64,000 nt of DNA from Macrostomum lignano (Eukaryota), in contig NIVC01002789.1 in NCBI GenBank assembly GCA_002269645.1, positions 1 to 64,000 on the forward strand. The letters run 5' to 3'. Below, one piece after another: positions 1 through 63,728 of the stretch (its first letter is position 1; every line of letters starts with the position of its first letter). The notes beneath the pieces are model-generated. The model searched no databases. It was not told where the DNA came from and saw nothing but the letters and a program-made list of their open reading frames with translations. The translations under genes were made by a program, and so were the position numbers.

Positions 1-729
1 GGGCCAGGCAGACTGTTTGCTTCTTGAAGCAGCAATTTCAGATTGTCCTCCGAGTAGCTGAGGTCGGCCTTGTTGGCAGCGATGAGTTTGACAGACCGGG
101 ACATGCCGGCGGAGAAGTGGTCCAGCTCGTCGCACAGGGTCTCCACCTGCCCAGGGGGTCCTGGGCGCCCAGGTCAATCACGCAGATCAGGCAGGGGCAG
201 CGGGCGATGTGGCTGCAGGTTGCGGTGGGATTGGAAAAGTACTTATGCAGCAGCCAAGGATGCCGGAGAATCACGCGGGCAACTCGTGGGCACTCGAATC
301 TGCGCAAAACTCGAAACTCCACAAACTCGAATCTCCACAAACTCGAAATCTCCACAAAAACAAACTCTAATCTCCACAAACTCGAAACTCCACAAACTCG
401 AATCTCCACAAACTCGAAAATTCACATCGCTAAAAAGTAACTCCCGCCATTACTAAAAACATCACAATTAGGAAGACGTGACATTTCGAGTTTATAAAAG
501 CGACCTGGCTTACTTGCTAACCAACTGCAAACTGCAGCCTTACCGCAGAAAGTCGTGGCCCAGGCCCTGGTTGTCGTGCGCCCCCTCGATCAGGCCGGGG
601 ATGTCCGCCACGCTGACGTCCAGACTGGGGAACTTCACCACGCCAACGTGAGGCTGCAGAGTGGTGAAGGGCTGGGGTGACACCCGCGGCCGCGCCCTGC
701 TCAGGGCCCTGAGCAGGGAGGACTTGCCA

Positions 730-761
<32 letters not shown>

Positions 762-1885
762 CAGCACGCGGAGCCGTAGCGACAGCGGCCTGCACTCGCC
801 TTTGGCTCCGTACTCGGCCAGCTGCGGCGCTCGATTGCTGTTGCTAAGGAAGAATGCGTTGCCCTTGCCGCCGGCGCCGCCCCTGGCCGCGATGTACAGC
901 TGGGGTTTGATGGGGTGGCTGCGATGTACAGCTGGGGTTTGAGGGGTGGCCGCGATGTACAGCTGGGGTTTGAGGGGGTGGCTGCGATGTACAGCTGGGG
1001 TTTGAGGGGGTGGCCGCGATGTACAGCTGGGGTTTGAGGGGTGGCTGCGATGTACAGCTGGGGTTTGAGGGGGTGGCTGCGATGTACAGCTGGGGTTTGA
1101 GGGGGTGGCTGCGATGTACAGCTGGGGTTTGAGGGGGTGGCCGCGATGTACAGCTGGGGTTTGAGGGGGTGGCTGCGATGTACAGCTGGGGTTTGAGGGG
1201 GTGGCCGCGATGTACAGCTGGGGTTTGAGGGGTGGCTGCGATGTACAGCTGGGGTTTGAGGGGGTGGCTGCGATGTACAGCTGAGGTTTGAGGGGGTGGC
1301 TGCGATGTACAGCTGGGGTTTGAGGGGGGTGGCTGCGATAAAAAAGTGCCCCTCAGCCGCAAACCGCAAACAACTTACCTGGCCGTCCTCCTGCAGCTCG
1401 CACAGCAACTGGCCAGCCTCATCAAAAACCTGCGTGCCAGGCGGCACGTCCAGCATCCGGTGCTCGCCGTTCCGGCCGTGGCAGTTGGAGCCGCCGCCGC
1501 CGCGACCGGCCTCGGCGCGAACCTCCGGCGGGATGGCGCTGAGGTCGCGTACGGACTCGCTGCAGCGCAGCACCACGTGGCCGCCGTGGCCTCCGTCGCC
1601 GCCGCCGGGCCCGGCCAGGGGGTTGCAGAACAGCCTGTTAAACGACACCATGCCGTCGCCGCCGCGCCCGCCCGAACACTGCAGCTGGCGCGAGTCGGCG
1701 AATCCTCGAACGTCGGCATCGCCGGCCGCCCGTCGCTTTCGGTGCAGCGGGCGAGGCGGCGACGTCGCCGCGGACGACGACGAAGCGAGGCGTCGACCAG
1801 CAAGCGACGACGACGACGGCAGCGCTCTGCCGAGAGCCAACAGCGACTGCGCCGTTCGGAGAAAAGTTGGCTGCAATATCAGGCC
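1..1885 (-). CDS. MTG2: Mitochondrial Obg-family GTPase (MTG2/GTPBP5-like). Exons 1885-1379, 899-544, 212-<1; 3' end outside the window; apparent 1-nt frameshift near 150-160
   Basis: Gly-rich Obg fold (GGRGGDG...[28 protein letters not shown]), G1 [10 protein letters not shown]2 PFTTLQP, G3 DIPG, HIARC, and G4 ANKAD in the shifted frame. Junctions CAG|gtaagt (1379), ccccag|CTG (899), CG|gtaagg (544), ctgcag|C (212) have consistent phases. Confidence 0.93.
306..420. repeat. ~16-18 bp minisatellite (aaactcgaaactccac) in MTG2 intron 2
   Basis: About 7 tandem imperfect copies visible. Confidence 0.85.
889..1340. repeat. 31-32 bp minisatellite in MTG2 intron 1; the unit spans the 3' splice site and first exon bases
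   Basis: Unit gctgcgatgtacagctggggtttgagggggtg, ~14 copies. On the minus strand it reads ...TCAAACCCCAG|CTGTACATCGC(A/G)GC, the same as the real acceptor plus exon-2 start. Confidence 0.95.
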
Positions 1886-1904
1886 CTGATTAGTACTGAT
1901 GATT

Positions 1905-2620
1905 TCAAAACAAACCGGAAGCAAACAAAGACAAACCGGAAGTCTAAGAAACACAAACCGGAAGCAAAAACACAAACAGGAAGAAAACAAAGACTCAAAC
2001 CAGAAAAAAACACAAACAGGAAGAAAACAAAGACTCAAACCAGAAAAAAACACAAACAGGAAGAAAACAGACACAAACCAGAAAAACACAAACAGGAAGA
2101 AAACAAAGACTCAAACCAGAAAAAAACACAAACAGGAAGAAAACAGACACAAACCAGAAAAACACAAACAGGAAGAAAACAAAGACACAAACCAGAAAAA
2201 CACAAACAGGAAGAAAACAAAGACACAAACCAGAAAAACACAAACAGGAAGAAAACAAAGACACAAACCAGAAAAACACAAACAGGAAGAAAACAAAGAC
2301 ACAAACCAGAAAAACACAAACAGGAAGAAAACAAAGACACAAACCAGAAAAAACACAAACAGGAAGAAAACAAAGACACAAACCAGAAAAACACAAACAG
2401 GAAGAAAACAAAGACACAAACCAGAAAAACACAAACAGGAAGAAAACGAAGACTCAAACCAGAAAAAAACACAAACAGGAAGAAAACAAAGACTCAAACC
2501 AGAAAAAACACAAACAGGAAGAAAACGAAGACTCAAACCAGAAAAAAACACAAACAGGAAGAAAACAAAGACACAAACCGGAAGCAAAAACACAAACAAG
2601 AAAGTAACAGACACAAATCT
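1905..2620. repeat. 38 bp minisatellite between TMEM70 and MTG2 (T/C-rich on the coding strand)
   Basis: Unit aaaaacacaaacaggaagaaaacaaagacacaaaccag, ~18 copies. Confidence 0.95.
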
Positions 2621-2798
2621 GAAGTCAAAAAGGACACAAACTGGAAGTTAAAACAAAGACTAAAAAATTATCAATTAAAAGCGACTGAAAGAAAGGAAGA
2701 CAAAAAATTGACTGAAAATCAGATTTGCATTTGTATTTTATAGCTAAGCAATGGAGCAATGCTAATATTCTATAGCAATAAAGGAGGCGCAGAAATCG

Positions 2799-3386
2799 CT
2801 ACTTGCTACTGCGGCCAGTAGTCTGTTGAAAAATTTTGGCCACAGAATCGAAGTCCAAGCTGGAGGCAGCGTCAACAAACAGTTTTGCACCGTTGCTGGG
2901 CACGCTTAAATTAGCAAACGGTATGCCAGTCTCTGTCAAGGCAACTTCGTCTGGCCGGAAATCGATAAACCGATTGCGCAACAACACAGTCTTGGTCACG
3001 GCTCGGTAGGCGGTGCCATCCGTGTTGGCAAACAGCCAGAACACGTAGGAAGATGTGAACAGGTGCAGCAGCAGTGGGGTGGCCAGGGAGAACAGGCCCA
3101 GACCTCCAATGAGCACAGCATCCACCGCTCCGCCCCTGCCAGCCATGATAACAAAGGCCTGGCCGCACAGCCCAGCACTGCTTGTGGCCAGCGAGAAAGC
3201 TTTCACGCCTCGAACCATCGCATTCTTGGGGCCCCGGTAAACTAAACGATAGTTGGAGCCGGCAAGCTGCTCTTCTGCTTGGCTTGCCTGGCACAGGGAC
3301 CTCTGGCTAGATTGACAGCTGGGTGGTAAACTCAAAAAGTTTGAATGGGTAGAAATTCTGATGATGGCTCTTGATGCAGACAGCAT
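2799..3386 (-). CDS. TMEM70: TMEM70-family mitochondrial ATP synthase assembly factor, intronless, ~195 aa
   Basis: RLVYRGPKNAMVRGVKAFSLATS...FSLATPLLLHLFTSSYVFWLF...YRAVTKTVLL matches the TMEM70 pattern (RLIYTG...GVKxFSxSTS...TPVLLHFITKGYV). Two hydrophobic segments. ATG at 3386 begins a presequence-like MLSASRAIIRIS. Confidence 0.85.
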   Translation of the reverse strand: MLSASRAIIRISTHSNFLSLPPSCQSSQRSLCQASQAEEQLAGSNYRLVYRGPKNAMVRGVKAFSLATSSAGLCGQAFVIMAGRGGAVDAVLIGGLGLFSLATPLLLHLFTSSYVFWLFANTDGTAYRAVTKTVLLRNRFIDFRPDEVALTETGIPFANLSVPSNGAKLFVDAASSLDFDSVAKIFQQTTGRSSK

Positions 3387-5218
3387 TGCAGAAGCAATGA
3401 AGCATGCAGTAGTCAGAAATAAAACTAAGTCAATGGACAGTGAAATTTTAGACTTTGTGCATATTATGCATCCATGATTTTTATACAATCTATAAGGAAT
3501 AATGTAAAATGATTGAATGAGGTTCGAAACATCAACTGTGGTGATGATGAAGATTTAATATGAAATATTACTGCACAAGAAAACTACTTAACCCTCTCGA
3601 TTTTAAACTGCCAAATAAGTTTTATTCATTTTTTGGCTAAAATTAATTAGTTGATATTCTCCCTAAATCTACTTATAAATCATTGTTAACTGTCACTACT
3701 CAATTTTTTTTTATTTTGCCTTTAAAATTAACAAAACAACAAAAAAGATCTCTTTTATTGAATGCAGAGTTTTATTTTCATAGGATTTCATACAGGAAAG
3801 ATATAATCATTCTAGTCTGATTATCAAGTCCATGGAGAGAACTCAGCTTTATATCTTAAGTCAAAAGCAAGCATTTGGTATGGAATAAGCAAGTGCTAGC
3901 ATAGTAATGGATCCAAATATTTGGATTTGAAATCAAAATGCATAAAATGTCTAACTTTTTTAGACATTTGAATGTTTTGAATTTAAAAATATTTCCAAAT
4001 ATCTGAAAATGTGCTTCTAAATATGAAAAAAATTCAAGAAACCAAAAAAATGTAAAAATTAAAGAATAAAACTTTTGAAAGAAGACAGTACATTAAAAAT
4101 TAAAATACTAAGTTTTATATTTTATTGTTCATTTTTACAATTGACAGTTTTTGCAATGGCATATATAGTTATAGTTATGATATAAAATGTTATTAAACTT
4201 TGGGACCTTTTAAGGCATTAAGCCTGAAGTTGAAAAGTTTTTCAGGTAATCATTTTTAAGTGTAATCATAACTTAGCTTTTCAAAATGCAAATGCATAGA
4301 CTATACAATATATATTTATGCATTGCATTATACATGTATTGTACTTTGAAATTAATTATCTGGATTCATCATTCATTTATGTGAGAGAGTTTACAAGAAC
4401 AATTCTTAGCACAAATATAGCCATGAACATATGTATATAATACAATACAATATAATATAATACATAATACAATAATATATATATAGGCCAAAAGGCCTAA
4501 AATATGCAGAGGGGCCTAACATAGGCCTAGTAAACAAAGTTACCATTATTTTAAAGTGCTAGGCCTAAAATTGAGAGTTGCAATTAATAGTGATCACATT
4601 TAGGCCCTAAAGGTTCACTGATTCAATAATTGGCTAATTGATGAAGTGGGTTGAGGGCATTCCATCTTATATACTAAATCTGAAAATGTTTGTAACTTTG
4701 TTTATAAGTTTCGCATCTCCTCTTGAACCACTTGGTAGATTTTCGTCAAATTTGTTTCATTCGATGTGGAATTCTACTGGGCCCATGTGGTCTAATTTTC
4801 ATTTTGATGTTGTAGTGTGAAGCCTCTGAAATTGGAGAAATACTGTATTTCGCCTATCTAATTAGTGTATTTTTCTCGCAGTCAGAGTTAAATTTTCAAT
4901 TTTATATCTATGGTGGTCCGTGAAGTTGACTACACGGCCGCAGCATCAGCAACAGCAGCAGCGGCGGCTCGAGTCTAAATAAAGTCTTTCAATATATAAA
5001 GCTAATTATATAGTGTATTTTTCTCGCATTGATTTTATAACCTTGAAGTTCTTTAAGGTGAGTTCAACCGGTGAGTTCAACCGGTGAGTCTGTTCAACTT
5101 CGATTCATTCATATTCGTGCTGGATTGGAGTGATTTGTCTGATCTTCTGTTTGTTTGTTTGTCGGCCTGAACCGGTTGACCGGTCTCAACAATTTCATGT
5201 GAATGTGTCTCTTAGTTT

Positions 5219-5579
5219 TTGATACCTGGGCGATTAATCATTAAGGAATTGCGAAACAATATCTTACAATGTCAAATTGCTGCTGGTCAATTCAAAGGCG
5301 AAACAGTTTTGTTGCCGCGTGTACCATTGATACCAAGTAATTTGGATCTACCTGTTAAGTTCAGAAGGCTACAATTTCCTCTACGACCCTGTTTCTGCAT
5401 GACTATTCATAAAGCACAAGGCCAATCCCTTGACGTAGTTGGAATTGACCTTGCAGGTAGCTGTTTTGCGCATGGACAGCTCTACACTGCACTTTCCAGA
5501 GCAAAAAAATGTTTGTAATGTTTGAGTTCGAATGTGCGGCAAAAGAACCAAAAATATCGTTTACCCAGAAGTTTTTTGA
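5219..5579 (+). pseudogene. Helitron RepHel PIF1-type helicase C-terminal fragment, frameshifted
   Basis: LPRVPLIPS...FRRLQFPLRPCFCMTIHKAQGQSLDVVGIDL...FAHGQLYTALSRAK, then TKNIVYPEVF* in another frame. Confidence 0.9.
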
Positions 5580-5832
5580 ATTGGACGTCTTTATTATCTA
5601 TTAATAATTTTTTATAATTCAATTTAAAAAAAATATGTTGCTATTTTACTATGAGCCACAATTAAATATTGAAAGTGCATGCTGTCACGCAAAACGTCTA
5701 TGAGAAAATGTGTGTCCTGAAACTGTATTTTTCGCGGAATGCATAAGCTTGAGATGCATTTCTAGCTTAAGATGAATTTCTAGCTGCAAGTAGTAAATTC
5801 CATTAAATTTGTCTTCATCGTTATGTTAAAAG

Positions 5833-6872
5833 ATGGCAAGCAAGCTAAGCAAGTTAACGATTTCTTCTCTCTCTGTCGGTCCCATGCACGGCGTAGTCTC
5901 CGGAATTACTTTGTTAAGAACTGAGGTAAGCTTCCATAATTTGCTATTTTGCTTCATATATATACTTTTTTTAAAAAATCAATCCACTTAAACAACATCG
6001 TTTTTTACTAAACCAGATTAGGGATGGCAAGAAGAACAAATGGTTTTCGTTTTTGATGTCAGATGAGTCAGGTGAAATCAGAGTGGCAGTTTTTGGCGAT
6101 GAGTTGCAAGAACACTGGAGCATTTGCGAAAACAGGCAAACAATCTCCATCTGTGAAGGAATGGTAAAGTGTGCTAATCCAAAATTCAACTGAACAAGCA
6201 ATATGCATGAAGTTACTCTGTCAATCAATGAGGATAACAAGGACTCTCTCCGCCAGTGTAGCGATGCGATAGTTCCCATAAATGGTCCGTTCAAAGCGCT
6301 CTCCGAACTACCAAGAATTGGAGTGAATGGGTAAGTCCATCCTCAAAATGTAGAATAAACAGGAAGATATATATACTTCACACATTTTCATTCTTCATAT
6401 TTTCAGTTTTGTTGATGTTCTCGGTGTCATTGTCAAAGTGGAACAACCCGTTGACGTCAACACGCGTTCCGGAAAGTTGGTGCAGCTCGCAAAAGTCTGC
6501 ATCGTAGACAAATCTGGTTTTCAGACTTTTTGCAACTTCTGGGACGCCTCTGCTACCCAGGTACATTTGTGGAGACCAGGAGACATAGTCGCTATTAGAA
6601 AAGCCAAGATTCAAGAGTACGCCGGCTCGCTTTGTCTTGCTTGCTCATCATCAACTATTTCGTATTCGCCTGTTCATGACACTGCTCAAGATCTGAAAAC
6701 CTGGTACGAAGAGTCCGAGAGCAGCACCCAATTTCTACCGCTAGCTAATAGCTCAACTATGGACATTACTGACACCGCAGCTGACGACGTGCTTGCATTT
6801 GAATTCCTAGCATCGATGCAGCCGCATATCGACCGGATGCGTCGAGTTGTTATCCGCTGTGGAGCGCAACGG
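5833..6872 (+). pseudogene. RPA70-like tandem OB-fold gene (Helitron cargo). Exons 5833-5925, 6017-6330, 6407-~6872; one premature TGA at 6191
   Basis: WFSFLMSDESGEIRVAVFGD (RPA70 DBD-A-like) and VDVLGVIVKV...DKSG...NFWD...VAIRKAKIQEY...SSSTISYSP...LKTWYE (DBD-B-like). GT-AG introns in consistent phase. Confidence 0.82.
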
Positions 6873-8220
6873 GTACTTATATATACATATGTATATTAAC
6901 GGGTATGATTTGACTTTTTAATAGATTGTACTTGAAGAACACATTAATACACTTTCCATTTTAGTACGTCGGCCTGTTGAACATTTGTAACGAATTCCTA
7001 TGAAAGATGGAAAGCTTACGGGAAACTCCCTGAAAAATACGGGAATCTGCTACAACCCCAAGTAACCGAGGATATTTTATGGTTAAATAATTATTTAGGA
7101 TATGCTGCAAGTAATTTTAGGTTGCTGTTTAAGTTAATTGTTGTCGATTACGTTAAGATTCAATGCTGCTGAAAATTTCAATTTGCTAGATCAAACTTTT
7201 GTTCTCAAACTTTCAAGCAAATTAACTACTACTTAAATTTGTTCCAGAATTTTTAATCGAATAAAACTAAACTAACCCAACTAACTAAACTATACTAACT
7301 AACGAAATTCACCCGCAAAAATACAATTGTAACCTTATGCCACATGCTAAAAGTAATAATTAAAAGCGAGTCTCTGAAATAAAAAGTGATAAGTTCGCCC
7401 GCAATAACTTCAACATGTCCATGGTCGGATGCTTTTCTTACTTGTTCTGTATATCAGCATACTTTTGAGTACAAAATGGACGTCAGTTTTATTTGATTGT
7501 TAATTTAGGCCTTAAAAATCCAATGGAAGATTGCGTCTAATCCAAAGAGAACTGTACAGTCTCCCCCCGAAAGGGGGGGGCAAATTCTCTAGTCCAATAT
7601 ACTAAAGTTGAAAATGCTTGTTTATATAATCTGCATCTCCTTTTTTTAAAGTGTTTGACGTACAGACATGGGATTTGCACCATTTGATGCAAAATTCTCC
7701 AGCAGTTGTATATGACTAATAAAAACAGGGTGTCTAACCTTAAGAAATGGGTGAAAATGTACAAAAACCTGTTTTTTCCTATCTCTCCAATGTATTTTGA
7801 CCTTGCTCCCTTGAATGATATAGTCTGTGGCAAAAACTGTGTATGTTAAAATTCTGCCAAGTAGCAACATGTATATTTTTCTATTTGTCTATTTGGGGCT
7901 AATATACTGCCTATGTTGAAATTCTACTAAACAGCTACCAGAGGTACATATTGCGCAGCTAAATAAACAATGAGAATATAGTCCGAAGCATCTAAAGAAT
8001 GAGTATACAAGTGCACAATCTGACAGACAGGATGCCACGCGTGCTCATGCTGATGAACTGCAAGCTAATGAGACAGATGTAGAGCACTTGGCTAGAGTGA
8101 ATGCTGTGCCTAGTTGCACTAAAAAAAGGTAAGCTGCTGAGACCAATGCTGAGCAACAGCCTCGCCTGAAATACAATAGAGTGCACAGAACTAAGGCACA
8201 TTAATATTACTGGCCCAGGT

Positions 8221-8640
8221 GATGCTCGAGAAAGTGTTCCATTTCTGATGCAAGATAGAGTTCAGATCTCTCCAATCAGGGGTGGTGGAAACTGTTTTTT
8301 CTGGGCAGTAGCTTATCAGTTTGCAGGCATGCCATTGCAAATACTCAACCATTGCAAAGTTGGAAGCTTAATGGCTACTGCTGCATCCAGACTGTTAATG
8401 GAACAGGCAGAGATTTTGTAGTCACAAGGCCTGAAAGTTGACGAGATTGTTTATGACACTCGATAAGATTGCGTTTATGTGCACAATTTTGTCGTACCTC
8501 TACTTGATAGAGTATTTGACCACAACTTGGAAATATATCAGCTAGACGAACGTAATGCTAGTAAAATGAATCTTCTTCAAGCTTCATTATCAGCCACCAG
8601 GCCACCTCTTGCCATTGCTAGGTTGCTCTATAGTATTTCA
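8221..8640 (+). pseudogene. OTU-like cysteine protease fragment with in-frame stops
   Basis: ISPIRGGGNCFFWAVAYQF resembles the OTU xDGNCxFRA motif; downstream LDRVFDHNLEIYQ; two stops in frame. Confidence 0.55.
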
Positions 8641-8689
8641 GTACTGTTATTGTGCCTCATATGTGCTCTACTCTATGAAACCATGCCAC

Positions 8690-9590
8690 TTTAACACCAC
8701 TTTTTTACGAAACCAGATACGAAATGGCACTAAGAACAAGTGGTTTTTGTTTGTGACTTCAGATGAATCAGGTGAAATCAGAGTGGCAGTTTTTGGCAAT
8801 GAGTTGCAAGAACACTGGGGCATTTGTGAAAATGGACTTGCTATTCCACAACGGAATGGTAAAGTGTGCCAACCCAAATTTCAATAGGACAAGCAATCCT
8901 TATGAAGTTACTCTGTCAATCACTGAGGACAACAAGGACTCTGTACCAGTGTAGCAATGCAATAGTTCCCATTGTTTGTCCATTTAAAACACTGTCTAAA
9001 CTACAGGGAATCGGATTAAATAGGTAAGTTCATGCTGAAAACATTTGAATAAACAAGAGAATTTTTTATTTCACATATCCTTCATTTCCATTCCTCACAT
9101 TAACAGTGTGGTCAATGTTCTCAGTTTTATTGTCAAAGTAAAGCAACCTGTTGACGTCAAGACGCATTCTAGAAAGTTGGTGCGGCTAGCAAAAGGTCAG
9201 CATAGTGGATAAATCTGGCTATCAAACAACTTGCAACTTCTGGGAAGCTTCTGCTTTTGAAGTACAATCATGGTGAACAGGAGATGTGGTGGCTATTCAA
9301 AAAGCTAAGATCTAAGAGTATTCCGGTTTGTTGTGCCTGAGCTGTTCTTCATCAACTATTTCATATTCACTTATTGATGATATGGCTATGGCTCAGGACC
9401 TACACAGCTGGTACGAAGAGCTTGAAAGCAGCACCAAATTTGTACCACTAGCCAACAGCACTACAATGTACAGAACTGTTGATACTGCAGCCAATGGCGA
9501 ACTGGCACTGGAATTCCCTGCATTGATCAGTCGCATTTTGACTAGATGCATCACATAGTTATCCGATATGGAGGAAAACAGGTAATTTTT
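8690..9590 (+). pseudogene. Second, more decayed RPA70-like copy
   Basis: Colinear with 6010-6870 (e.g. tcagatgaatcaggtgaaatcagagtggcagtttttggc), same intron position, several stops and frameshifts. Confidence 0.8.
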
Positions 9591-9824
9591 TGCCAGTATG
9601 ATTTTACCTATAATTATTCTTACTTCAAAAATGCACAAATGCACTTTTCATTTTAGTACATGGGCCTGCTGAATGTAATGAAGGATTGAAAAGTTTTGAA
9701 ACACGTGAGTCTACTGCAACCCAAGCTACTGAGGATTGCTTGCTGAAGATTTGTTTGAGTTTTTAACTACTGAGTTGTTAACTGAACATGACAAAAGTTT
9801 ACATAGCTATTGATGCTGTTTTGT

Positions 9825-9946
9825 TTTGTGCATGGTCAACTCTACACAGCCCTTTCCAGAGCAAAAAATGTTTTTCAAGTTCAAGTTTAGATGTTGGTTG
9901 TTGTCTAGTTAAAAAAAACGAAAACATTGTTTACCAGGAGGTCTAA
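9825..9946 (+). pseudogene. Second Helitron helicase C-terminal fragment
   Basis: FVHGQLYTALSRAKNVF and TKNIVYQEV-like tail; similar to 5460-5579. Confidence 0.75.
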
Positions 9947-10619
9947 ATAAACTAAAACTCAAAGCTCAAAAACTGCCTGTCTATTGGCTTCAATGCTCAA
10001 TTATCTAAATTCATGACTTTCCTTTAAGCTGTGTTCATACATGCTCTTCTTGAAAAAATATGACATTATTTTATTATGATGTGCGATAAAATACTGAAAG
10101 TATATATTGTCACGCCAAATTCACTCACTCCTTCTATGGGAAAAGCTTCTCCTTACACTGTGTTATTTGCAAGTGCATAATCTTGAGATAGTGAGAATTG
10201 CTTGCTTGCTTGCTAACTAAAAAATGGTAGCAAGCTAAGCTTTAGTTAGGCCTAGTACATTTTGACAACATATTAAAGACAAAATTCTAATAGCAAACAA
10301 GTATAAGAAATTTGTCTTTACTTCATTTTTTATAAACATAAAATACCACATTTTACTCATCAAACAGCATTGACCATTGTTACTCACATCTAGGCCAGCC
10401 TCATAGAGTCAGTTAGGCCTAGACCTAGTCAGTCTAGCAAAGGTCTAAAACATTAAACATACAAGACAATAGATATATCTTAATTCCCCACAGAACCCCC
10501 TTGACATATTACATATATATAGGCTCTGAGGACTGAGTTGCAGATCTAGAATTCAACTTCGTCTTGACTTCTAAGTTTAACTTAATAAGAAAGGCAAAAC
10601 ATATCAAAATATTAGCTTT

Positions 10620-10792
10620 GGAAGTGGTTATTTTACGGCTGAGCCATAGATATAGCCAGCGAGGTAAGTAATACAGTAAGTAATACTTACGGCTCAGCCG
10701 TAATAATAACAATTTTTGACATTTCTACGGCCAGCCGTAAAAATTAGAATTTGGGCTATATCTACGGCTCAGCCGTAAAAATAACCACTTCC
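10620..10792. mobile_element. 173 bp MITE with ~38 bp TIRs and a 9 bp TSD (Mutator-like)
   Basis: TIR ggaagtggtta(t)ttttacggctgagcc(a/g)tagatatagcc at both ends; ATTAGCTTT duplicated at 10611-10619 and 10793-10801. Confidence 0.9.
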
Positions 10793-12973
10793 ATTAGCTT
10801 TAGGTCTGCGTCTGCTTTCTATCAAAAGCAATAACAATTTTATTATGAAAAAAGTCAAAATTTCCTATCTTCGTACTGAATTTTTCGGCAAAACAAGCCT
10901 CCTTAACTTTTTCTAAGAAGCGTAGTTTCCCATCCTTAACTTGAGTTGAGTTTAGTCTTCTAAGAGTCTGAAAGAGTTGTGACGGGGGACTTGTGGAAAA
11001 CTTCATTGTTTTACTATCATTTTTACTATCAGTAGACTACTACGTAAGTGTATCATATTTTGTATGAATTCTGTGTACGAGTACATTCATTGAATCGGCT
11101 TTTATATGTCGGCAAGTGATGAATTTTTAACAAATCAATAATTTGCCCAGCGCCCATCGTAACTCTCAGCCAATTACAATTCGCTGTATCATCTATCGTT
11201 TTATATTAACTGTTCGTTTTTCGTCGCTACTCAAAAACAAATAAAAAACTTGGCCAACTAAGCAAGCAAAATATATCAATTCAATTGAATATTGGACTGC
11301 GCTATACTTGCATTTTTCTTCGGTCTTGTTCGGTCTTGTTCTGCCAAGGACTGCCAGATTAGATTCGTCACAGAGTCTTCTTCACACGCTGTCTCTTTAA
11401 ATTGGCGCCTTTCAAAAAGCTAATTGTTGACTCAAAGCCGTGACTAATCTGACACTACGTATTAGGCCGTGGAATGATTGCTAAACCCTACACAAAAATT
11501 ACCGAAGCGAAAACTAAAGTTTTTGTTACTAGCCAGCCTATGAACATATGACCTACACAATTAAAAATGCAATATCAAGACGCATGCTTGATAAACTCGA
11601 GTATTAAGACTGTATGTTCATTCAGTGATTCTGCGTGCGAGTTAAAGTTCATGAAAATTTCGTGCCTAAATTTAGTAGCTGTTATTATGCTTTAGACCCC
11701 AATGTATGCATATACCGCTCAAACAGCAGAAAACTTAGAATTGCGCAGCATCTACGAATGAGTTCAGCTCGAAATTCGATCGTCGCGCGTTTTTGTGTAA
11801 TGTATATACGTTGCACTGAACACTCGTACATTTTTTGTATTATTACAAGTAAAAATATTACGCGTCATTTCGCCCAAAAGTAATCAAAAAATCATTCGGC
11901 ATAATTATTTAAAATCTAGAGGGCAATAGCTTTTCCAGCAGTTCTAAAGTTTAAATTCAAATTGAACGTTTCTACGATTCCTATAAGGACGTATGTTTTT
12001 TGCATAGGGATGATAGCTCTCAAATTTCAGAAGCCCATATTGATGTTGGTTTCGTGACCTTTCTAGCCCTCCAAGAAATTTAACAGTATGAAAAATTTTC
12101 TACGAGTAGTTGACAAACTCGATGCTTCATATGACAATGTCTTTTGTCCATCCAATTTTTATCTCAAGAAAAGCAACTCATTAAAAGTCGATTCTTAAAA
12201 GCGCAATTCTCATTCATACGGCAATTCAATGTCGGACAGCTCACTGCTACATTTTAGACAAATTAATTTAACATACAGCACAGGTATTAACTGTGTAGTT
12301 TGTGTATATTTGAACCAGTTTTAATAAGCACTCCAACAATTCTAACAAAGTATAACTTAACTTTTTATCAATTCTCTTTACGAATTTAAAATTAGTGGAA
12401 CAGAGAACTAAAGTGACAATTTACGTACTAGCAGTAGTATTGCTAATGATAATAAGTATAACAAAGTTATAACCTGTAAATACAAACGAATAAGTATGCT
12501 TGAATCTAGAGAAAACCACTCTAATTTAACAAACAAGACGAACAGTAGCGATTGGACAGGGAGCGCGGACACTACAGGCCATGATGCGCTCAAATCTCGA
12601 ACACCAGAAACAGCAAATTGGCAACTTTGTAAGCTTGCGATTCCTAGCTATTTAAGCAATTATGGTGAGTAGATTTCCAGTCACTTCACCTCGGTCTCGA
12701 GCTAGCAGATGGGGCGGTCAATGCAGAGAGGGGAACAGAAAAGCAAAAAAGCAACAACAGCAAAATGTGGAAAGAAAACTAGAAGAGAGCAAAACCAGGG
12801 AAGATTGGAAACATTCAACAGAATTAAACAGCGATAAGAAATTTTAAACGAGAAACATCGAGTGACAATGATAGACCAACAGCCTCAGCAATATTCATCA
12901 GAGACCTGACGCTTTCTAATATAAGTTTAACGCTTTTCACTAAAACCATCAAAACTCATCATGACTTGTCAGC

Positions 12974-15900
12974 TTACTCAATCAGCTTCTTGGCCTTGAA
13001 GTAGCGGCGCAGGTAGAGAACTTGCCAGGTGGCCAGGCCCAGCAGGCACAGCATGGAGAACACGGAGAAGTACAGCACTCGGGAGTGGGTGGACTCTGCG
13101 CGGGCAGTTGCGGTGACAGCAATGTTAGATTAGATCCAGTATTGAACTTCAATGAAAACGGCACATAAATGAAATCTGAATTTGAATTTAGATCTAATTA
13201 GATTCTAGATCTACAATCTCGCCTAACTAGATCTACAATCTCACATAATTAGATCTACAATCTCGCCTAACTAGATCTACAATCTCACATAATTAGATCT
13301 ACAATCTCACATAATTAGATCTAAAATCTCGCCTAACTAGATCTACAGCCTTATCTAATTAGATCTACAGATCTTACCTAAATAGATCTACAGCCTTATC
13401 TAATTAGATCTACAGATCTTACCTAAATAGATCTACAGATCTTACCTAAATAGATCTACAGATCTTACCTAAATAGATCTACAGATCTTACCGAAATAGA
13501 TCTACAGATCTTACCTAAATAGATCTATAGATCTTACCTAAATAGATGTACAGATCTTACCTAATTAGATCTACAGTCTTATCTAACTAGATTTACAGAT
13601 CTTACCTAAATAGATCTATAGATCTTACCTAATTAGATGTACAGATCTTAATGATCAACAGATCTCACCTAATTATATCTACAATCTCACATTAAACAAA
13701 AATCCCATCTAATGGTGATGATATTGATTAAAACAGAAATAATGTCTACAAGCTCATCTCATGCATTCTGCCAGTCCAACCCGCAAACTTGCAAGGAAGC
13801 TGTGCCTCTCACCGTTGGTGTCCCGCATGGCCTCCTCCCTGGAGCGCATGTAGGCGAAATCGTTAACAATGGATTCGCTCAGATCTTCCAAGCGCTTCAG
13901 TTCAACCTCCAGCGGCTTCAGCTTCTGAGCTTTGGCGATCTGCAGTTTAAGCATTGATTGAGTATTGTCAGTCTTGGCAACTGATTATCAATATTCTGTT
14001 TACAAATTAGCAGCATCTCGTAAGGTTGAAGCAGCTCGCTCACCTCGTCGTAGTTCTTGGCCTCAGCGCCGTGGCGCACGTCGACGTAGACCTCCAAATC
14101 GGCGCCGCGGCCGCCGCCCTCCATGTGCGATTCGAAGCAGACGTCGAACAGGTCGTACTCGTCAGAGTTGAAGGCAAATTTGCCCTCACCTTTGGCGTTG
14201 TCCTTGTTGAAGAACACGTGCTTCTTGGAGTCGGTAACCTACATTTGAGAGATTGTTAATCATTAACATCTGGGTTTTCAAGCGTCAGAATCACAGTGCC
14301 ATTCGGCATCCTTGGTCCAAATTCAGGGTGCCGGCTGGCACTAGTAGAAAAATTACAATACCTCCTACTCTACCCTGTACACTCCTGAGCCTCTCTGACC
14401 TATAGAAGCTGTGCATGTGTTTACCCAAAATTGATAATCAATAGAAGTTTTGAAATCTGAAGAATCTTAACAATTATTAAATTATTGATACTTTAAAGAA
14501 CTACGAATTACAGAAAAGATTGTTGAACTCAACTAAATTGCATCTGGCTTAGAAACAAAGTGTTGTTAATTTGGCATCTGGGGTTTAAATTCAGGATGCC
14601 AAAACTAAAGCTACCTATTCCTAATAAGATTGACAATTCATCCCTATAAAAAGAAGACCAAGACTTATGATATTATAGAACTAATGAAGCATATACTCAT
14701 ATACCTTTATTGGAGCAAATCAAAAATTGTATATACAAGTACTAATATATAACCAAAATTTGATCCTAGGCAAGAAACTACACCTTTTTACCTTTGCATT
14801 TGTATTGCTTATTGGCAACAAACATTTTTGCCTGTAACTGTTTTGTTTTTACTTTGGCACTTGTAATATTTGTTTTTTTGTTTATATATAATGTTTCTTC
14901 TTTGATAACAACAAAAACAACAAAGTACGCTGTCAGGTGGAAAAATGCAGCATTTTTTATAGAAGTTATTTTATTTAAAGTCCTAAATATGTTTTGCACT
15001 TTCTAAATTGACATTTGGTCAATATACATAGGATAGTTTATTGAAAATTAGAAGATATTAAAAATTTATGAGTTCAGTGCTATATATATAGAAAATAAAA
15101 TCAAATTTGTTTTATTCTTGAGAACTGATATGCAGTCCTATTTTTATTTAAAAAAAGATAAATAAACAAACTACTGATAGTAAAAATATGTATATGTAAA
15201 AATATGTAACTTTTTTGCTGATGCTTTTTGCAGTTATTTTCATATACAAATTGTTCATGAGAAAAAATGCAATATCAGCTATATTTATAGAAAAAATTAT
15301 GAAAAGTCATTTTAAGAGACTTTTTATTTTGCAAAAGACAAACCAACTTTTTGATAAAACACAATCACAAACTGAAATGTAATAAACACATTTAAAACAC
15401 AAATTGTAGTCACTAAAATAGTAATGGTCTAGATTATACTAGGTGCACACTTGAACAAAAATTGAATAATTACAAATGCACACCAAAAAATGAGCGCATG
15501 CCCATTCTAAAAACTGCAACAATAAATGACCTTTTGAATCGCATAATAGTAAATAGACCCTTTTTGGCAGATAACTTGGTTAATTTTTCTGCTTTTGGAG
15601 GATTCTGGAGATTGATGCCAATGCATGCCTAAATTTTTGGGTGTATACTATATGAACCCAAGTGTGGTAAAATAGGCCTAAATTTTTTCTAAAATCCTTT
15701 CTTACTTTAAAAAAAAATTTTAAAGTAAAAAGTAAGGATATTTTGAAAATAGAAGAGTAAGATCTTCATTAGTTTTTAGGCCTACACTTAATTTTGTTAC
15801 TAAATTGTCTTATACTAATAGAATATTAGATTACATTATTAATAATACCATAAAAAGTAATTTTGCACAATTTTTTTCTTTTGTAGAATATAGAACATTG

Positions 15901-24368: not shown

Positions 24369-24944
24369 CGCTTGGCCAGGTAGCCGCTAGCGCACCGGCC
24401 GCCATACACATTGGCCACTCATATTTAGCAGCTCACAAATTAGAGGCAGATGTGAAAACACAGCAACGCCCCCCCCCCCCCCGGCTGTCTCTTGGCTACC
24501 AAACCGGCAGCTGTACTCTCGTAAGAAGCCGAAAACAAGAGACGAAAGACGAGATGAGCAGCGGCTATTGTAACCACGACAGGCGGTGGACTTCATGCAA
24601 GCAGTGGCTCTGTTCTATTCTTTCTGTTCAAGCCGTATGGCTGCTAATACTGCAGGACTTTAAAAATAGAAATACATTAATAGAACCCTGCCTTCTTTTG
24701 CTGGCAAATGGCGCAAGTGTGCACTGTGAAGTGTAGGCTCTTCCATGCAATAATTGAGTGAGTGGGCATCAGTACTAGAAATTAAATGCAGTTGAAATGG
24801 AGACTTGCACTCCAAATAGGGCGCTGCTGCATAGGTCTGATCCATAGCCCTGCCTTGAGAACAGATAATTATGAGAAGCTCAAGCCAAACTTGTCTCCAT
24901 TACAACCCTAATCTAATAAGCTAGGGAGCCTACATTAACAGAAA

Positions 24945-48439: not shown

Positions 48440-49230
48440 TTTGCCTATAAAGAAACAACATCAAGGAGCAGCTGCTGGTGCCACTGACACTATGCAAACA
48501 TTGGAGGCTACTGATGCATCTCGCAAGGCCTGAGTGCAGGAAGTCTGCTGTGACTTCTGTCTATTACTAAACTAAACTAGTTTATGATAAATGCGGGAGC
48601 CATCCAGCTTGGCATGTTGTTCCTCCACGCTTCTGTTTTTGTTTTACTATTACTATAGTTAGCTCCAGCCTCATAAATTAAAATAACACCAGGAATCAGA
48701 CTTGGCCTCTAACTAAAATAACTATAGTTTAAAAGTGGTAGGAATAGATTCCCTTGTAATTTTCGATTTGTCTGGTTGTTTGTTTTAATTGTTCTTTGTT
48801 CTATGTTGTTCTTTCAATTTTTGTTGCCTCTTTCTGCTGGCTTCCATTTATGGTTTTTTACATTTTGCAGCCTTCTCTTTTTCTGTTTTACACATGTTTT
48901 TTGTCCCGTTTACTACTTGTCTGTAAAGAAATGATGTCAAAGGAGCATCTACTGGTGTCAATGACACTGTGCAGCTGGGGGCTACTGATGTGCTTCATCT
49001 CGCAAGGCCTGATCTCGGGAAGTCTGCTGTGACTTCTGTCCAAGCTACTAAACTTGTTTATGACAAATACAGGAGCAATCTAGACTAGCATGTTTTTCCC
49101 CCACATTTTTTGTTTTTCACTGGAAATTTGCTCTTTCTTATATAGATTAACCAACTACATTAAACTATAGTTAGCTTCAGTCTCGTAAATTAGAGTAACA
49201 CCAAGAATCAGGCTTGTTCTGCCCTTATTG
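48440..49230. repeat. Diverged direct duplication (~48440-48800 vs ~48920-49230)
   Basis: Shared catctcgcaaggcctga...ggaagtctgctgtgacttctgtc and flanks. Confidence 0.75.
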
Positions 49231-50836
49231 CATGGGTCCCCAACCCACTGTTAGCATTAGGCCACATTCAATATTTATGCAATAAGATACACGGGCTGCA
49301 AAAAGTACACAAATTGTCGCCTCTATTTTTCTGTTGGCTTCCATTTATGCGCATTTTTTAGTTTTGTAGCCTTTTCTGATTTTCTGTTTTGCACAAGTTT
49401 TTTGGTCACATTTCCTTCTTTCCATAAATATATACATATTTATGCAACATCCCTTTTTCCTTTTTCCAACTGTTTTAATTATTTGAAAGTTTAATTTACA
49501 TTGACTACTCTTTTCATTTTGTCTTCCTTCCCTCATTTAAACATTTACTTCTCACAAATTCATACATACACTTTATAACTCGTAGCTGACTAATAGGTCA
49601 ACTATAATAGCTAGCATCAAATAGCACATTATGTGTTTAGTTTAACTGCTTTAAACTGCAAATCTACTTGTCTAACTAATTCACACCAAATGGCACATTG
49701 TGTGCTAGCTTAACTGCTTCAAGCTGCACATTTATTTGTATTGTGCCAAATGGTACATTTACGGCACAGTTGTGCATAATTATAAGCATTCAAAAATAGC
49801 TTGGACAACTGGCACAGTTGTGGCATAGTAGTGCACAATAAAAAATTTGATTTTTAATTGTGTCACATATGCCAATTGGCACAGCTTGGTGCAGTTATAT
49901 TTGTGCCAAGCTGTGCCACCAATTGTCAATTCTTGCCAATTTTGTGTCATTTTAACAGTTATTTTGGGATTCTCTCAATTCATTTTTTGTGCTATTTGAT
50001 GCATTTAAAGAACAATTATTTCTAGTCAAGAAGACTTATGGAAATATTAAGACTCTTAAAAATTGCTTTCAACAAACTTCAAATCCTAGTCACTATAGAC
50101 ATGAAAGTAGCAAACATCATCTATGGAATATAGCCACATTATTGCACATATCCATGCCTTTATTTATTGCAAAGCTCTGGTTTTTCTTACAAAAACAAGG
50201 TGCCAAAAACTCTTGAGAGAATTTGGCAGTTTGCTTAGCAGTTTCAAGCAGCTGGTCAAGTACATGCAAAAGCAAATATTTAAAAAAACTATATCAACAT
50301 TACAATGACAAGGCCATGACAAGGCAATAATGATAAAGAAGTTCTATTAATAAATAACAACCAGCTAATAGCCAACTATGACTATTAGTAACTAGTCATG
50401 ACCAATTGACATTACATTATTATTTACTCTTTATATTAGGTAGACCACAAAATGCATATATTTTCTAGAAAATAATAACAAATTCAGTGTATATTAGTCT
50501 AGTTTTACTTTACAAAACAACTCTACCCTAAGAATTTCTACAGATTGAACTTGAAAAGTAGGTGAATTTTCTTCTAATTATAGAGGTATTTTAACTTTTT
50601 TGATAATGAAAATACAGGGATACCCTTGATTAAATTGTAACCCCTTTAACTAAATTTTACTTGAGCCATTCATAATGTTCATCCTATGTTCATGAGCTGT
50701 GTGTCACCTGCAATATTAGTATACATAATGGACTTAAGCATCATGTAGTGAATGAAGGCTATAATGTCATCCAATAGCTACTATATCACAAATGATAGTC
50801 TATTGAGCTATTCAGTATCAGAGACCAGAGGCATAA

Positions 50837-63585: not shown

Positions 63586-63728
63586 GTAAGTCTTTGTTGT
63601 ACTGCTGCATTTCCTGTGTGCCTGTGTGTTGCTAGTTTAAATAATAGTCTGCTGATGTTGAATGTCCCGGCAGTTAGTGCATTTATGTATTTTAAATTGA
63701 TATGTAGAACTGTTAAGGCACCTTTTAC

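What the first reader, a model, noticed from the sequence alone, without database searches (positions are those of the whole stretch)
1379..3386. MTG2 has no start codon for its N-terminus: candidate TMEM70-MTG2 operon with a spliced-leader-donated AUG
Seen: the MTG2 frame is open well upstream of the Obg fold. The first in-frame ATG (MVSF) lies inside the conserved Gly-rich motif. The only ATG I found between it and the TMEM70 stop is ATG CAA ATC TGA (~2730). Two acceptors, aatCAG|GGC (1885) and ttgCAG|CCA (1870), are both exactly in frame; adding AUG gives [39 protein letters not shown], an Arg/Leu/Ser-rich, acid-free, presequence-like N-terminus. TMEM70 ends ~0.9 kb upstream on the same strand. 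Established: flatworm spliced leaders end in AUG, which can serve as initiator (shown in Schistosoma), and SL trans-splicing resolves operons. Inference: two mitochondrial inner-membrane biogenesis genes form a polycistron.
Basis: partly seen in the sequence, partly recalled or inferred. Interest (0 to 1): 0.8.

Follow-up and report, generated by a model that had tools for sequence, protein, structure and literature searches.

The report
MTG2 start codon supplied by spliced leader
In this flatworm (Macrostomum lignano) locus, the mitochondrial GTPase gene MTG2 has no start codon of its own and most likely takes its AUG from the trans-spliced leader, as the second gene of a probable operon; this mechanism is already known in flatworms, so it is a clean example, not a new kind of thing.

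Summary
The window is Macrostomum lignano Mlig_3_7 (NIVC01002789.1:1-64000). On the minus strand, a TMEM70-family gene (ATG 3386, stop 2798) lies 927 nt upstream of MTG2.

- **No usable start codon.** The MTG2 frame has no in-frame ATG between the stop at 2113-2111 and M75 (ATG 1651). M75 sits inside the conserved Obg fold, which begins at F58.
- **No upstream ATG exon.** The sense strand has no GT[AG]AG donor between 1886 and 5267.
- **The acceptor is in frame.** TTGCAG|CCA (first exon base 1870) fits the published M. lignano trans-splice motif. The deposited annotation of the second genomic copy starts the MTG2 CDS at exactly that base, without a Met. The M. lignano leader ends in ...TTGCATG, so trans-splicing gives [12 protein letters not shown]..., with no acidic residue in the first 51 residues.
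- **A relative agrees.** It has an aligned, in-frame TTCCAG|CCG acceptor and no ATG in the 225 nt that follow.
- **TMEM70 is trans-spliced too.** The window reads GCATG, the leader's last five bases, where the other copy has the acceptor TTCAG. This is probably an artefact of RNA-seq polishing.
- **Operon.** Spacing meets the published criteria, and the cluster probably continues into UVSSA and Nup85.

I could not reach any direct RNA reads. The mechanism is known (Cheng 2006), so interest is modest.

The parts
2798..3402 (-). TMEM70/TMEM186/TMEM223-family gene, a single exon. The trans-spliced exon starts at 3402, its own ATG is at 3386-3384 and the stop is at 2800-2798.
   Evidence: ORF and translation. 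Pfam PF06979, E=3.3e-15. The annotated product P0121 starts at 3401 with 'FIASAM', i.e. 5'-partial with no Met.
3403..3407 (-). GCATG, the last 5 nt of the spliced leader, sitting where the acceptor should be. Probably introduced when the assembly was polished with RNA-seq reads.
   Evidence: The window reads ctactGCATG|cttc. The 99%-identical second copy L002 reads ctactTTCAG|cttc. The assembly was polished with Pilon using RNA-seq mapped by STAR. SL sequence.
2737..2742 (-). TATAAA, the only poly(A)-signal-like hexamer downstream of the TMEM70 stop apart from an overlapping AATACA. No canonical AATAAA or ATTAAA is present.
   Evidence: Pattern scan.
1966..2602 (.). 38-bp tandem repeat (about 16 copies, T/G/C-rich on the sense strand) that fills most of the intergenic spacer. 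The looser 23-bp TRF row spans 1965-2660.
   Evidence: TRF. Copy number differs in the second genomic copy.
1871..1876 (-). TTGCAG, the inferred SL trans-splice acceptor of MTG2. The first exon base is 1870.
   Evidence: Matches the [T/C]TNCAG motif. It is the only such motif next to and in frame with the ORF. The annotated CDS of copy L002 starts at the equivalent base. It aligns with TTCCAG|CCG in the relative L001.
1886..1891 (-). It is in frame but is neither consensus nor annotated.
1379..1870 (-). MTG2 exon 1. It encodes the presequence-like region (1870 to about 1700) and the start of the Obg fold. The first internal in-frame ATG is at 1651-1649 (M75).
   Evidence: Translation. Alignment. 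Pfam PF01018.
900..1378 (-). MTG2 intron 1 (GTAAGT ... CAG), almost entirely a 32-bp tandem repeat.
   Evidence: A gene model with these junctions reproduces the annotated 339-aa and 383-aa products exactly.
544..899 (-). MTG2 exon 2: the end of the Obg fold and the GTPase G1-G3 region.
1..212 (-). MTG2 exon 3, which runs off the window. It carries a 1-bp deletion between 149 and 148 relative to the second copy, which truncates the annotated product at 40-38.
   Evidence: Window GGGCAGG against L002 GGGCCAGG. The resulting models are 339 aa and 383 aa.

Best explanation
**What it is.** This is a Macrostomum lignano locus in which the TMEM70-family gene and MTG2 are co-oriented and are most likely transcribed as one precursor. 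That precursor probably continues into UVSSA and Nup85, beyond the window.

**How MTG2 gets its start codon.**
1. The 35-nt spliced leader (...TTGCATG) is trans-spliced onto the TTGCAG| acceptor, joining to base 1870.
2. This releases a monocistronic MTG2 mRNA whose first AUG is the leader's 3'-terminal AUG, in frame with the ORF.
3. Initiation there gives [23 protein letters not shown]..., a 57-residue extension in front of the Obg fold (F58). Its first 51 residues carry no acidic residue and are rich in Arg, Ser, Ala and Leu. I read it as the mitochondrial targeting sequence.

**The upstream gene.** It is also trans-spliced, at 3402. There the leader AUG is out of frame and opens a 32-codon uORF that overlaps the gene's own AUG (3386). 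That AUG must therefore be reached by leaky scanning.

**Shown here.**
- The sequence anatomy.
- The lack of any alternative AUG or donor.
- The deposited Met-less CDS boundary at the acceptor.
- Conservation of the in-frame acceptor in a relative.
- An SL-derived footprint at the TMEM70 acceptor.

**Inferred.**
- SL reads at 1870.
- Translation from the SL AUG.
- Mitochondrial import.
- Co-transcription.
For: **Species and its leader.** Identity. SL sequence, the [T/C]TNCAG trans-acceptor motif and the operon criteria.

**No other way to start the protein.**
- No in-frame ATG between the stop at 2113 and M75.
- M75 lies inside the conserved Obg fold.
- No GT[AG]AG donor on the sense strand between 1886 and 5267.
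- The only intergenic ATG is MQI* at 2730.

**The deposited annotation agrees.**
- The annotated CDS of copy L002 starts at the first base after TTGCAG and reads PTFLRTAQ...; the 383 aa were reproduced exactly.
- The window copy is annotated from 1867, and its 339 aa were also reproduced.

**A relative shows the same anatomy (L001, 79-86% identical).**
- It has an aligned TTCCAG|CCG acceptor.
- The distance from acceptor to first ATG is 225 nt, against 219 nt here. Both are multiples of 3 despite indels.
- Those 225 nt contain no ATG in any frame.

**The N-terminus looks like a presequence.** The first acidic residue is at position 52, and the first 52 residues hold 8 Arg and 1 Lys.

**The upstream gene is trans-spliced.** GCATG replaces TTCAG in the window copy, and the assembly was polished with RNA-seq.

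**Spacing fits an operon.**
- TMEM70 to MTG2: 927 nt here, of which 637-696 are repeat.
- In L002: 838 nt (661 repeat), about 745 nt (543 repeat) and 1301 nt (1079 repeat) for the three successive spacers.

**Precedent.** Use of the SL AUG as initiator is established in Schistosoma and noted as likely in Macrostomum.
Against: - **No RNA-level data could be reached.** I saw no SL-containing read, no precursor-spanning read and no TSS data. The annotated MTG2 proteins and any transcript-derived ORFs could not be retrieved.
- **The window copy's annotated start is 3 nt off.** It is 1867, not 1870. The annotated 5'-partial starts of UVSSA and Nup85 do not sit exactly at acceptors either. So the annotated boundaries are not always trans-splice sites.
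- **The SL AUG has a weak context.** It has U at -3. In the neighbouring gene it must be bypassed, so the efficiency of its use for MTG2 is unknown.
- **The operon call rests on distance criteria only.** An internal promoter in the 927-nt spacer is not excluded.
- **The window copy carries a frameshift in exon 3.** It may be non-functional, or it may be mis-assembled.
Confidence: 0.75

Rival explanations
1. MTG2 is SL trans-spliced and uses the SL AUG, but it is not in an operon. It has its own promoter in the spacer, and the sequence upstream of 1870 is a short monocistronic outron.
For: Most trans-spliced M. lignano genes (about 60%) are not in operons. The spacer is 927 nt, long for a classical operon, and nothing seen here shows a precursor.
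Against: Most of the spacer is a hypervariable tandem repeat. After subtracting it, the distance is about 230-290 nt, within the published operon mode and threshold. The same pattern of repeat-filled spacers recurs for the next two co-oriented genes.
Confidence: 0.2
2. MTG2 gets its ATG from a cis-spliced upstream exon, either beyond or inside TMEM70, joined to the 1870 or 1885 acceptor.
For: Small ATG-bearing first exons do exist in this genome. The 4E-BP gene in the window has a six-codon ATG exon spliced in cis.
Against: There is no GT[AG]AG donor on the sense strand between 1886 and 5267. The only phase-compatible ATG-plus-donor candidate within 11 kb (9167-9098) is AT-rich and does not look coding. 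The RNA-seq-based annotation starts the CDS at the acceptor in both copies.
Confidence: 0.03
3. Translation starts inside the gene at M75 (ATG 1651), or at a near-cognate codon, and the upstream open frame is non-coding.
For: ATG 1651 is the first genomic in-frame ATG. A prokaryote-style gene call on the relative's contig chose the equivalent Met.
Against: M75 lies 17 residues inside the Obg fold, after four invariant glycines. Every eukaryotic orthologue has a 40-70-residue extension before the fold. The region upstream is conserved in frame between two species. An out-of-frame ATG at 1719 would intercept scanning ribosomes before they reach 1651.
Confidence: 0.02

Closest known systems
SL-AUG-initiated ORFs of flatworms (Cheng, Cohen, Ndegwa & Davis 2006, J Biol Chem 281:733; called 'slORFs' in PMC9851317)
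   Same: The leader ends in AUG. The acceptor is in frame with an ORF that has no AUG of its own before the conserved domain. In Schistosoma mansoni the SL AUG is in frame in 28% of trans-spliced transcripts, and more than 40 cDNAs need it.
   Different: This is a different species (a free-living macrostomorph) and a different gene. Translation from the SL AUG has not been shown experimentally for Macrostomum in any paper I could find. Wiberg et al. only call it a likely start codon.
Macrostomum lignano operons as defined by Ustyantsev & Berezikov 2021 (PMC8629364)
   Same: Adjacent co-oriented genes, with the downstream gene at a [T/C]TNCAG acceptor. The spacer is inflated by simple repeats and falls below 1 kb after subtracting them. 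The upstream gene is also trans-spliced.
   Different: Membership here is inferred from sequence and CDS boundaries, not from that paper's SL-read tracks. The cluster may hold four genes rather than the typical two.
Nematode SL2-type operons (C. elegans)
   Same: A polycistronic precursor is resolved by trans-splicing at the 5' end of downstream genes.
   Different: M. lignano has a single SL with no SL1/SL2 specialisation. Spacers are far longer and repeat-filled. The nematode leaders do not end in AUG, so they cannot supply a 3'-terminal AUG in this way (background knowledge).

Membership tests
MTG2 / ObgH1 (mitochondrial Obg-family GTPase) | N-terminal glycine-rich Obg fold (PF01018) followed by an Obg-type GTPase domain | tested here: met
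   PF01018 E=5e-45 and PF01926 E=3e-21. The best named hits are 'mitochondrial ribosome-associated GTPase 2' from molluscs, arthropods and nematodes at 47-54% identity.
MTG2 / ObgH1 (mitochondrial Obg-family GTPase) | Cleavable mitochondrial presequence ahead of the Obg fold | tested here: inconclusive
   With the SL Met, the first 51 residues have no acidic residue and hold 8 Arg and 1 Lys. Orthologues have extensions of 40-70 residues. No targeting predictor or import assay was available.
TMEM70/TMEM186/TMEM223 family | Match to Pfam PF06979 above the gathering score | tested here: met
   56.8 bits against a cut-off of 22, E=3.3e-15.
TMEM70 proper (as opposed to TMEM186 or TMEM223) | Orthology to TMEM70 rather than to the paralogous subfamilies | not tested
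   The homologue search returned only the protein itself, and there was no PDB relative. The 'TMEM70' label is therefore at family level only.
SL trans-spliced gene of M. lignano | Species has an SL RNA, and the first exon is preceded by a [T/C]TNCAG acceptor with no cis donor upstream | tested here: met
   SL and motif. TTGCAG| at 1876-1871. No GT[AG]AG donor for 3.3 kb upstream.
SL trans-spliced gene of M. lignano | SL-containing reads joined at the acceptor | not testable with these tools
   Only indirect evidence. The deposited CDS starts at the acceptor without a Met. For the upstream gene, an SL-derived GCATG sits in the assembly.
SL-AUG-initiated ORF (Cheng 2006 type) | SL 3'-terminal AUG in frame, no intervening stop, and no genomic in-frame AUG before the conserved domain | tested here: met
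   The same holds in the relative L001.
SL-AUG-initiated ORF (Cheng 2006 type) | Translation demonstrably initiates at the SL AUG | not testable with these tools
   Needs ribosome profiling, N-terminal proteomics or a reporter.
M. lignano operon (Ustyantsev & Berezikov criteria) | Adjacent genes on the same strand with nothing on the opposite strand between them, and a repeat-adjusted distance under 1 kb | tested here: met
   927 nt, of which 637-696 are tandem repeat. 838 nt with 661 repeat in the second copy.
M. lignano operon (Ustyantsev & Berezikov criteria) | Polycistronic precursor observed | not testable with these tools
   No RNA data could be reached.

The most novel reading that the evidence does not exclude
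MTG2 depends obligatorily on the leader's AUG, and this dependence is conserved across Macrostomum. Expression of a mitochondrial ribosome-assembly GTPase would then be hard-wired to trans-splicing. Within one four-gene operon (TMEM70-family, MTG2, UVSSA, Nup85), the same SL AUG would have to be used for one cistron and bypassed by leaky scanning for its neighbours. That would make the locus a natural test-bed for how flatworm ribosomes choose between the SL AUG and downstream AUGs.
Probability: 0.45. Interest if true: 0.4.

Novelty: new member of a known kind. Interest (0 to 1): 0.27.

Why it matters
- **A clear example in a tractable species.** The case shows sequence-level signs that an SL-donated start codon is needed for a conserved, probably essential mitochondrial protein. 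It occurs in the one flatworm with stable transgenesis, so the Schistosoma-based idea could be tested directly in vivo.
- **An annotation point.** Met-less '5'-partial' CDSs that begin at trans-splice acceptors in Mlig_3_7 may in fact be complete once the SL AUG is added.
- **A data-quality point.** The reference assembly seems to carry leader-derived bases that overwrite real acceptors, a side effect of RNA-seq polishing. Anyone analysing splice sites or designing constructs from this assembly needs to know that.

None of this changes current understanding of trans-splicing.

Tried and rejected
- **Spliced leader or SL RNA gene in the window.** No match to the full 35-mer with up to 3 mismatches and no Rfam hit at gathering score.
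- **Transcript-derived ORFs carrying the SL Met.**
  - The first homologue search returned no M. lignano protein, only a relative's fragment.
  - A search with the N-terminal 86 residues found nothing.
  - The 195-aa TMEM70 ORF is not on record.
- **Gene lists in paper supplements.** No mention of MTG2, TMEM70, UVSSA or NUP85 in the two papers searched.
- **Identity of the relative's sample, SRR28338163.** Not found in the literature, and the cluster look-up gave no names.
- **Window-wide scan for leader 3' suffixes as polishing footprints.** Only the site at 24744 exceeds block-shuffle controls. The 6-mer at TMEM70 is not significant on its own. Its weight comes from the comparison with the second copy.
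- **The 1885 acceptor.** Rejected as the main site. AATCAG does not fit the motif, and the annotation starts at 1870.
- **An ATG exon in the spacer.** Rejected. The only ATG there (2730) is followed by a stop after three codons, with no GT in between.
Full report
**Where the window comes from**

The only database protein matching the TMEM70-family ORF is encoded on two contigs of GCA_002269645.1, the Macrostomum lignano Mlig_3_7 assembly. Locus L003 is identical to the reverse complement of window 1-13401. The window is therefore NIVC01002789.1:1-64000.

A second copy of the locus lies on NIVC01002947.1 (L002). It is 99% identical and extends further downstream. M. lignano has one 35-nt spliced leader, CGGTCTCTTACTGCGAAGACTCAATTTATTGCATG. 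About 30% of its genes are trans-spliced and about 15% lie in operons. The enriched trans-acceptor motif is [T/C]TNCAG.

**Checking the observation**

All features are on the minus strand.

- The TMEM70-family ORF runs from ATG 3386 to the stop at 2800-2798 and matches Pfam PF06979 at E=3e-15.
- MTG2 exon 1 ends at 1379 with a CAG|GTAAGT donor.
- The MTG2 frame is open upstream to a TGA at 2113-2111. The first in-frame ATG is 1651 (MVSF).
- The acceptors AATCAG|GGC (1885) and TTGCAG|CCA (1870) are both in frame.
- In an alignment with nine orthologues, the Obg fold begins at F58 of the SL-Met protein, which aligns with the bacterial N-terminus MFIDE. M75 follows four invariant glycines. It cannot be the natural N-terminus.
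- One correction: besides ATG 2730 (MQI*), there is an out-of-frame ATG at 1719.
- One caveat: the spacer has few ATGs mainly because 640-700 of its 927 nt are a T/G/C-rich 38-bp tandem repeat.

**Gene model**

Exons 1870-1379, 899-544 and 212 onward reproduce the deposited products exactly.

| Copy | Annotated CDS start | Product |
|---|---|---|
| Window (L003) | 1867 | 339 aa, stop at 40-38 |
| Second copy (L002) | first base after TTGCAG, equivalent to window 1870 | 383 aa, begins PTFLRTAQ... with no Met |

The window copy is short because it lacks one C between 149 and 148: GGGCAGG where L002 has GGGCCAGG.

**Evidence that the leader supplies the AUG**

1. The leader ends in ATG. Joined at 1870 it gives ATG CCA ACT TTT..., which reads [34 protein letters not shown]..., continuous with the Obg fold.
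2. No other source of an AUG exists nearby. The sense strand has no GT[AG]AG donor between 1886 and 5267. The single intergenic ATG is followed by a stop after three codons. TTGCAG at 1870 is the only consensus acceptor next to and in frame with the ORF.
3. The RNA-seq-based deposited annotation starts the CDS at that acceptor without a Met.
4. A contig from a related species shows the same anatomy (L001, Logan SRR28338163; 86% identity in the search, 79% in the full alignment).
   - It has an aligned TTCCAG|CCG acceptor.
   - The distance from acceptor to first ATG is 225 nt, against 219 nt here. Both are multiples of three despite several indels.
   - Those 225 nt contain no ATG in any frame.
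   - This contig reads into the next intron, so it is genomic or pre-mRNA sequence and does not show the leader itself.
5. The SL-Met N-terminus has its first acidic residue at position 52 and holds 8 Arg and 1 Lys. That resembles a mitochondrial presequence. All eukaryotic orthologues carry 40-70-residue extensions.
6. Use of the flatworm SL AUG as initiator is established in Schistosoma (Cheng et al. 2006). There it is in frame in 28% of trans-spliced mRNAs and required by more than 40 cDNAs. All reported flatworm leaders end in AUG. Wiberg et al. call the Macrostomum SL ATG a likely translation start.

**The upstream gene is also trans-spliced**

In L002 the TMEM70 exon is preceded by ctactTTCAG|CTTC, a consensus acceptor. 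The window copy reads ctactGCATG|CTTC at the same place. That is four mismatches within five bases, in a region where the copies otherwise differ about once per 200 nt, and the new bases equal the last five bases of the leader.

The assembly was polished with Pilon using RNA-seq mapped by STAR. The simplest reading is that SL-bearing reads overwrote the acceptor. That is indirect evidence for trans-splicing at 3402.

The deposited TMEM70 CDS starts at the first full codon after that junction, again without a Met. Here the SL AUG is out of frame and opens a 32-codon uORF that overlaps the gene's own AUG. The same leader AUG must therefore be bypassed for one gene and used for the next.

**Operon**

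The published operational definition is: co-oriented neighbours, the downstream gene trans-spliced, and less than 1 kb between them after subtracting repeats. The authors note that repeats inflate operon spacers, and the repeat-adjusted mode is about 100 bp.

| Spacer | Length (nt) | Tandem repeat (nt) |
|---|---|---|
| TMEM70 to MTG2, window | 927 | 637-696 |
| TMEM70 to MTG2, L002 | 838 | 661 |
| MTG2 to UVSSA, L002 | about 745 | 543 |
| UVSSA to Nup85, L002 | 1301 | 1079 |

UVSSA and Nup85 follow on the same strand, each preceded by an acceptor-like site. A four-gene operon is therefore plausible. That argues against a specifically 'mitochondrial' functional grouping. No precursor transcript was seen, and an internal promoter is not excluded.

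**Weak points**

- I could not reach any RNA reads. The M. lignano MTG2 proteins did not appear in the homologue searches, and the SL-Met protein could not be looked up.
- The annotated start of the window copy is 3 nt downstream of the acceptor. The 5'-partial starts of UVSSA and Nup85 are not exactly at acceptors. Annotation boundaries are therefore suggestive, not proof.
- The SL AUG has U at -3, so how efficiently it is used is unknown.
- 'TMEM70' is established only at family level, TMEM70/TMEM186/TMEM223.

**Comparison and novelty**

The mechanism is that of Cheng et al. 2006 (SL-AUG initiator methionine), combined with operon resolution as described for M. lignano. I found no paper describing this locus, or experimental SL-AUG use in Macrostomum. 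It is therefore a new member of a known kind, and it is already implicit in the deposited annotation. Interest is modest.

**Control**

The 4E-BP gene in the same window (Pfam PF05456, E=6e-36) has an ordinary six-codon ATG exon (29187-29170). It is cis-spliced (GTGAGT ... CCAG|) in frame to 29087. Met-less first exons are therefore not a general feature of the region.

Noticed in passing
window 3403-3407 (minus), compared with L002 9995-9999: The reference assembly reads GCATG, the 3' end of the spliced leader, where the paralogous copy has the acceptor TTCAG. This is probably an artefact of Pilon polishing with RNA-seq. It destroys the real acceptor in the deposited sequence.
   Followed up: yes
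window 24759-24744 (minus); also 24600-24594 (minus) and 49225-49234 (plus): ACTCAATT-ATTGCATG matches 16 of the last 17 leader bases, with one T missing. It lies about 375 nt upstream of the ATG of the ORF at 24368-23409 and is the only SL-suffix match above shuffle controls. It is not followed by GT, so it is not an SL RNA gene. It could be another polishing footprint or an SL-bearing retro-insert. The shorter suffix matches (7-mer and 10-mer) are within the range expected by chance.
   Followed up: partly
window 148-149 (minus), MTG2 exon 3: A 1-bp deletion (GGGCAGG against GGGCCAGG in the second copy) shifts the frame and truncates the annotated product to 339 aa. It is either an assembly indel or a degenerating duplicate.
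   Followed up: partly
window 884-1339 (MTG2 intron 1): The 32-bp tandem repeat (14 copies) that fills intron 1 includes the acceptor and the first 16 nt of exon 2 (CCCCAG|CTGTACATCGC...). The intron therefore holds about 14 decoy copies of its own 3' splice site. The relative's contig L001 has no intron here at all.
   Followed up: partly
window 3402-3307 (minus): After trans-splicing, the SL AUG is out of frame for the TMEM70-family gene. It opens a 32-codon uORF (MLHCFCNAVCIKSHHQNFYPFKLFEFTTQLSI) that overlaps the main AUG at 3386.
   Followed up: yes
L002 13511-20603 (beyond window position 1): UVSSA and Nup85 follow MTG2 on the same strand, with spacers made almost wholly of tandem repeats. 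Together they form a candidate four-gene operon. In both, the SL AUG would be out of frame if the nearest acceptor-like sites are used.
   Followed up: partly
window 29187-28704 (minus): A 4E-BP gene with a six-codon ATG mini-exon (29187-29170) cis-spliced to the main exon (29087-28704). It served as a control for ordinary start-codon architecture.
   Followed up: partly
window 63213-63590 (plus); 6438-6899 (plus): A nuclear-receptor DNA-binding-domain exon (zf-C4, E=1e-21), and an ORF resembling an RPA OB fold on the opposite strand, upstream of TMEM70. The latter may belong to a transposon.
   Followed up: no
whole window: Exons are very GC-rich (0.72 in MTG2 exon 1) against AT-rich spacers (0.34). 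Minisatellites with 16-44-bp units fill most introns and intergenic regions, and their copy numbers differ between the two genomic copies.
   Followed up: partly
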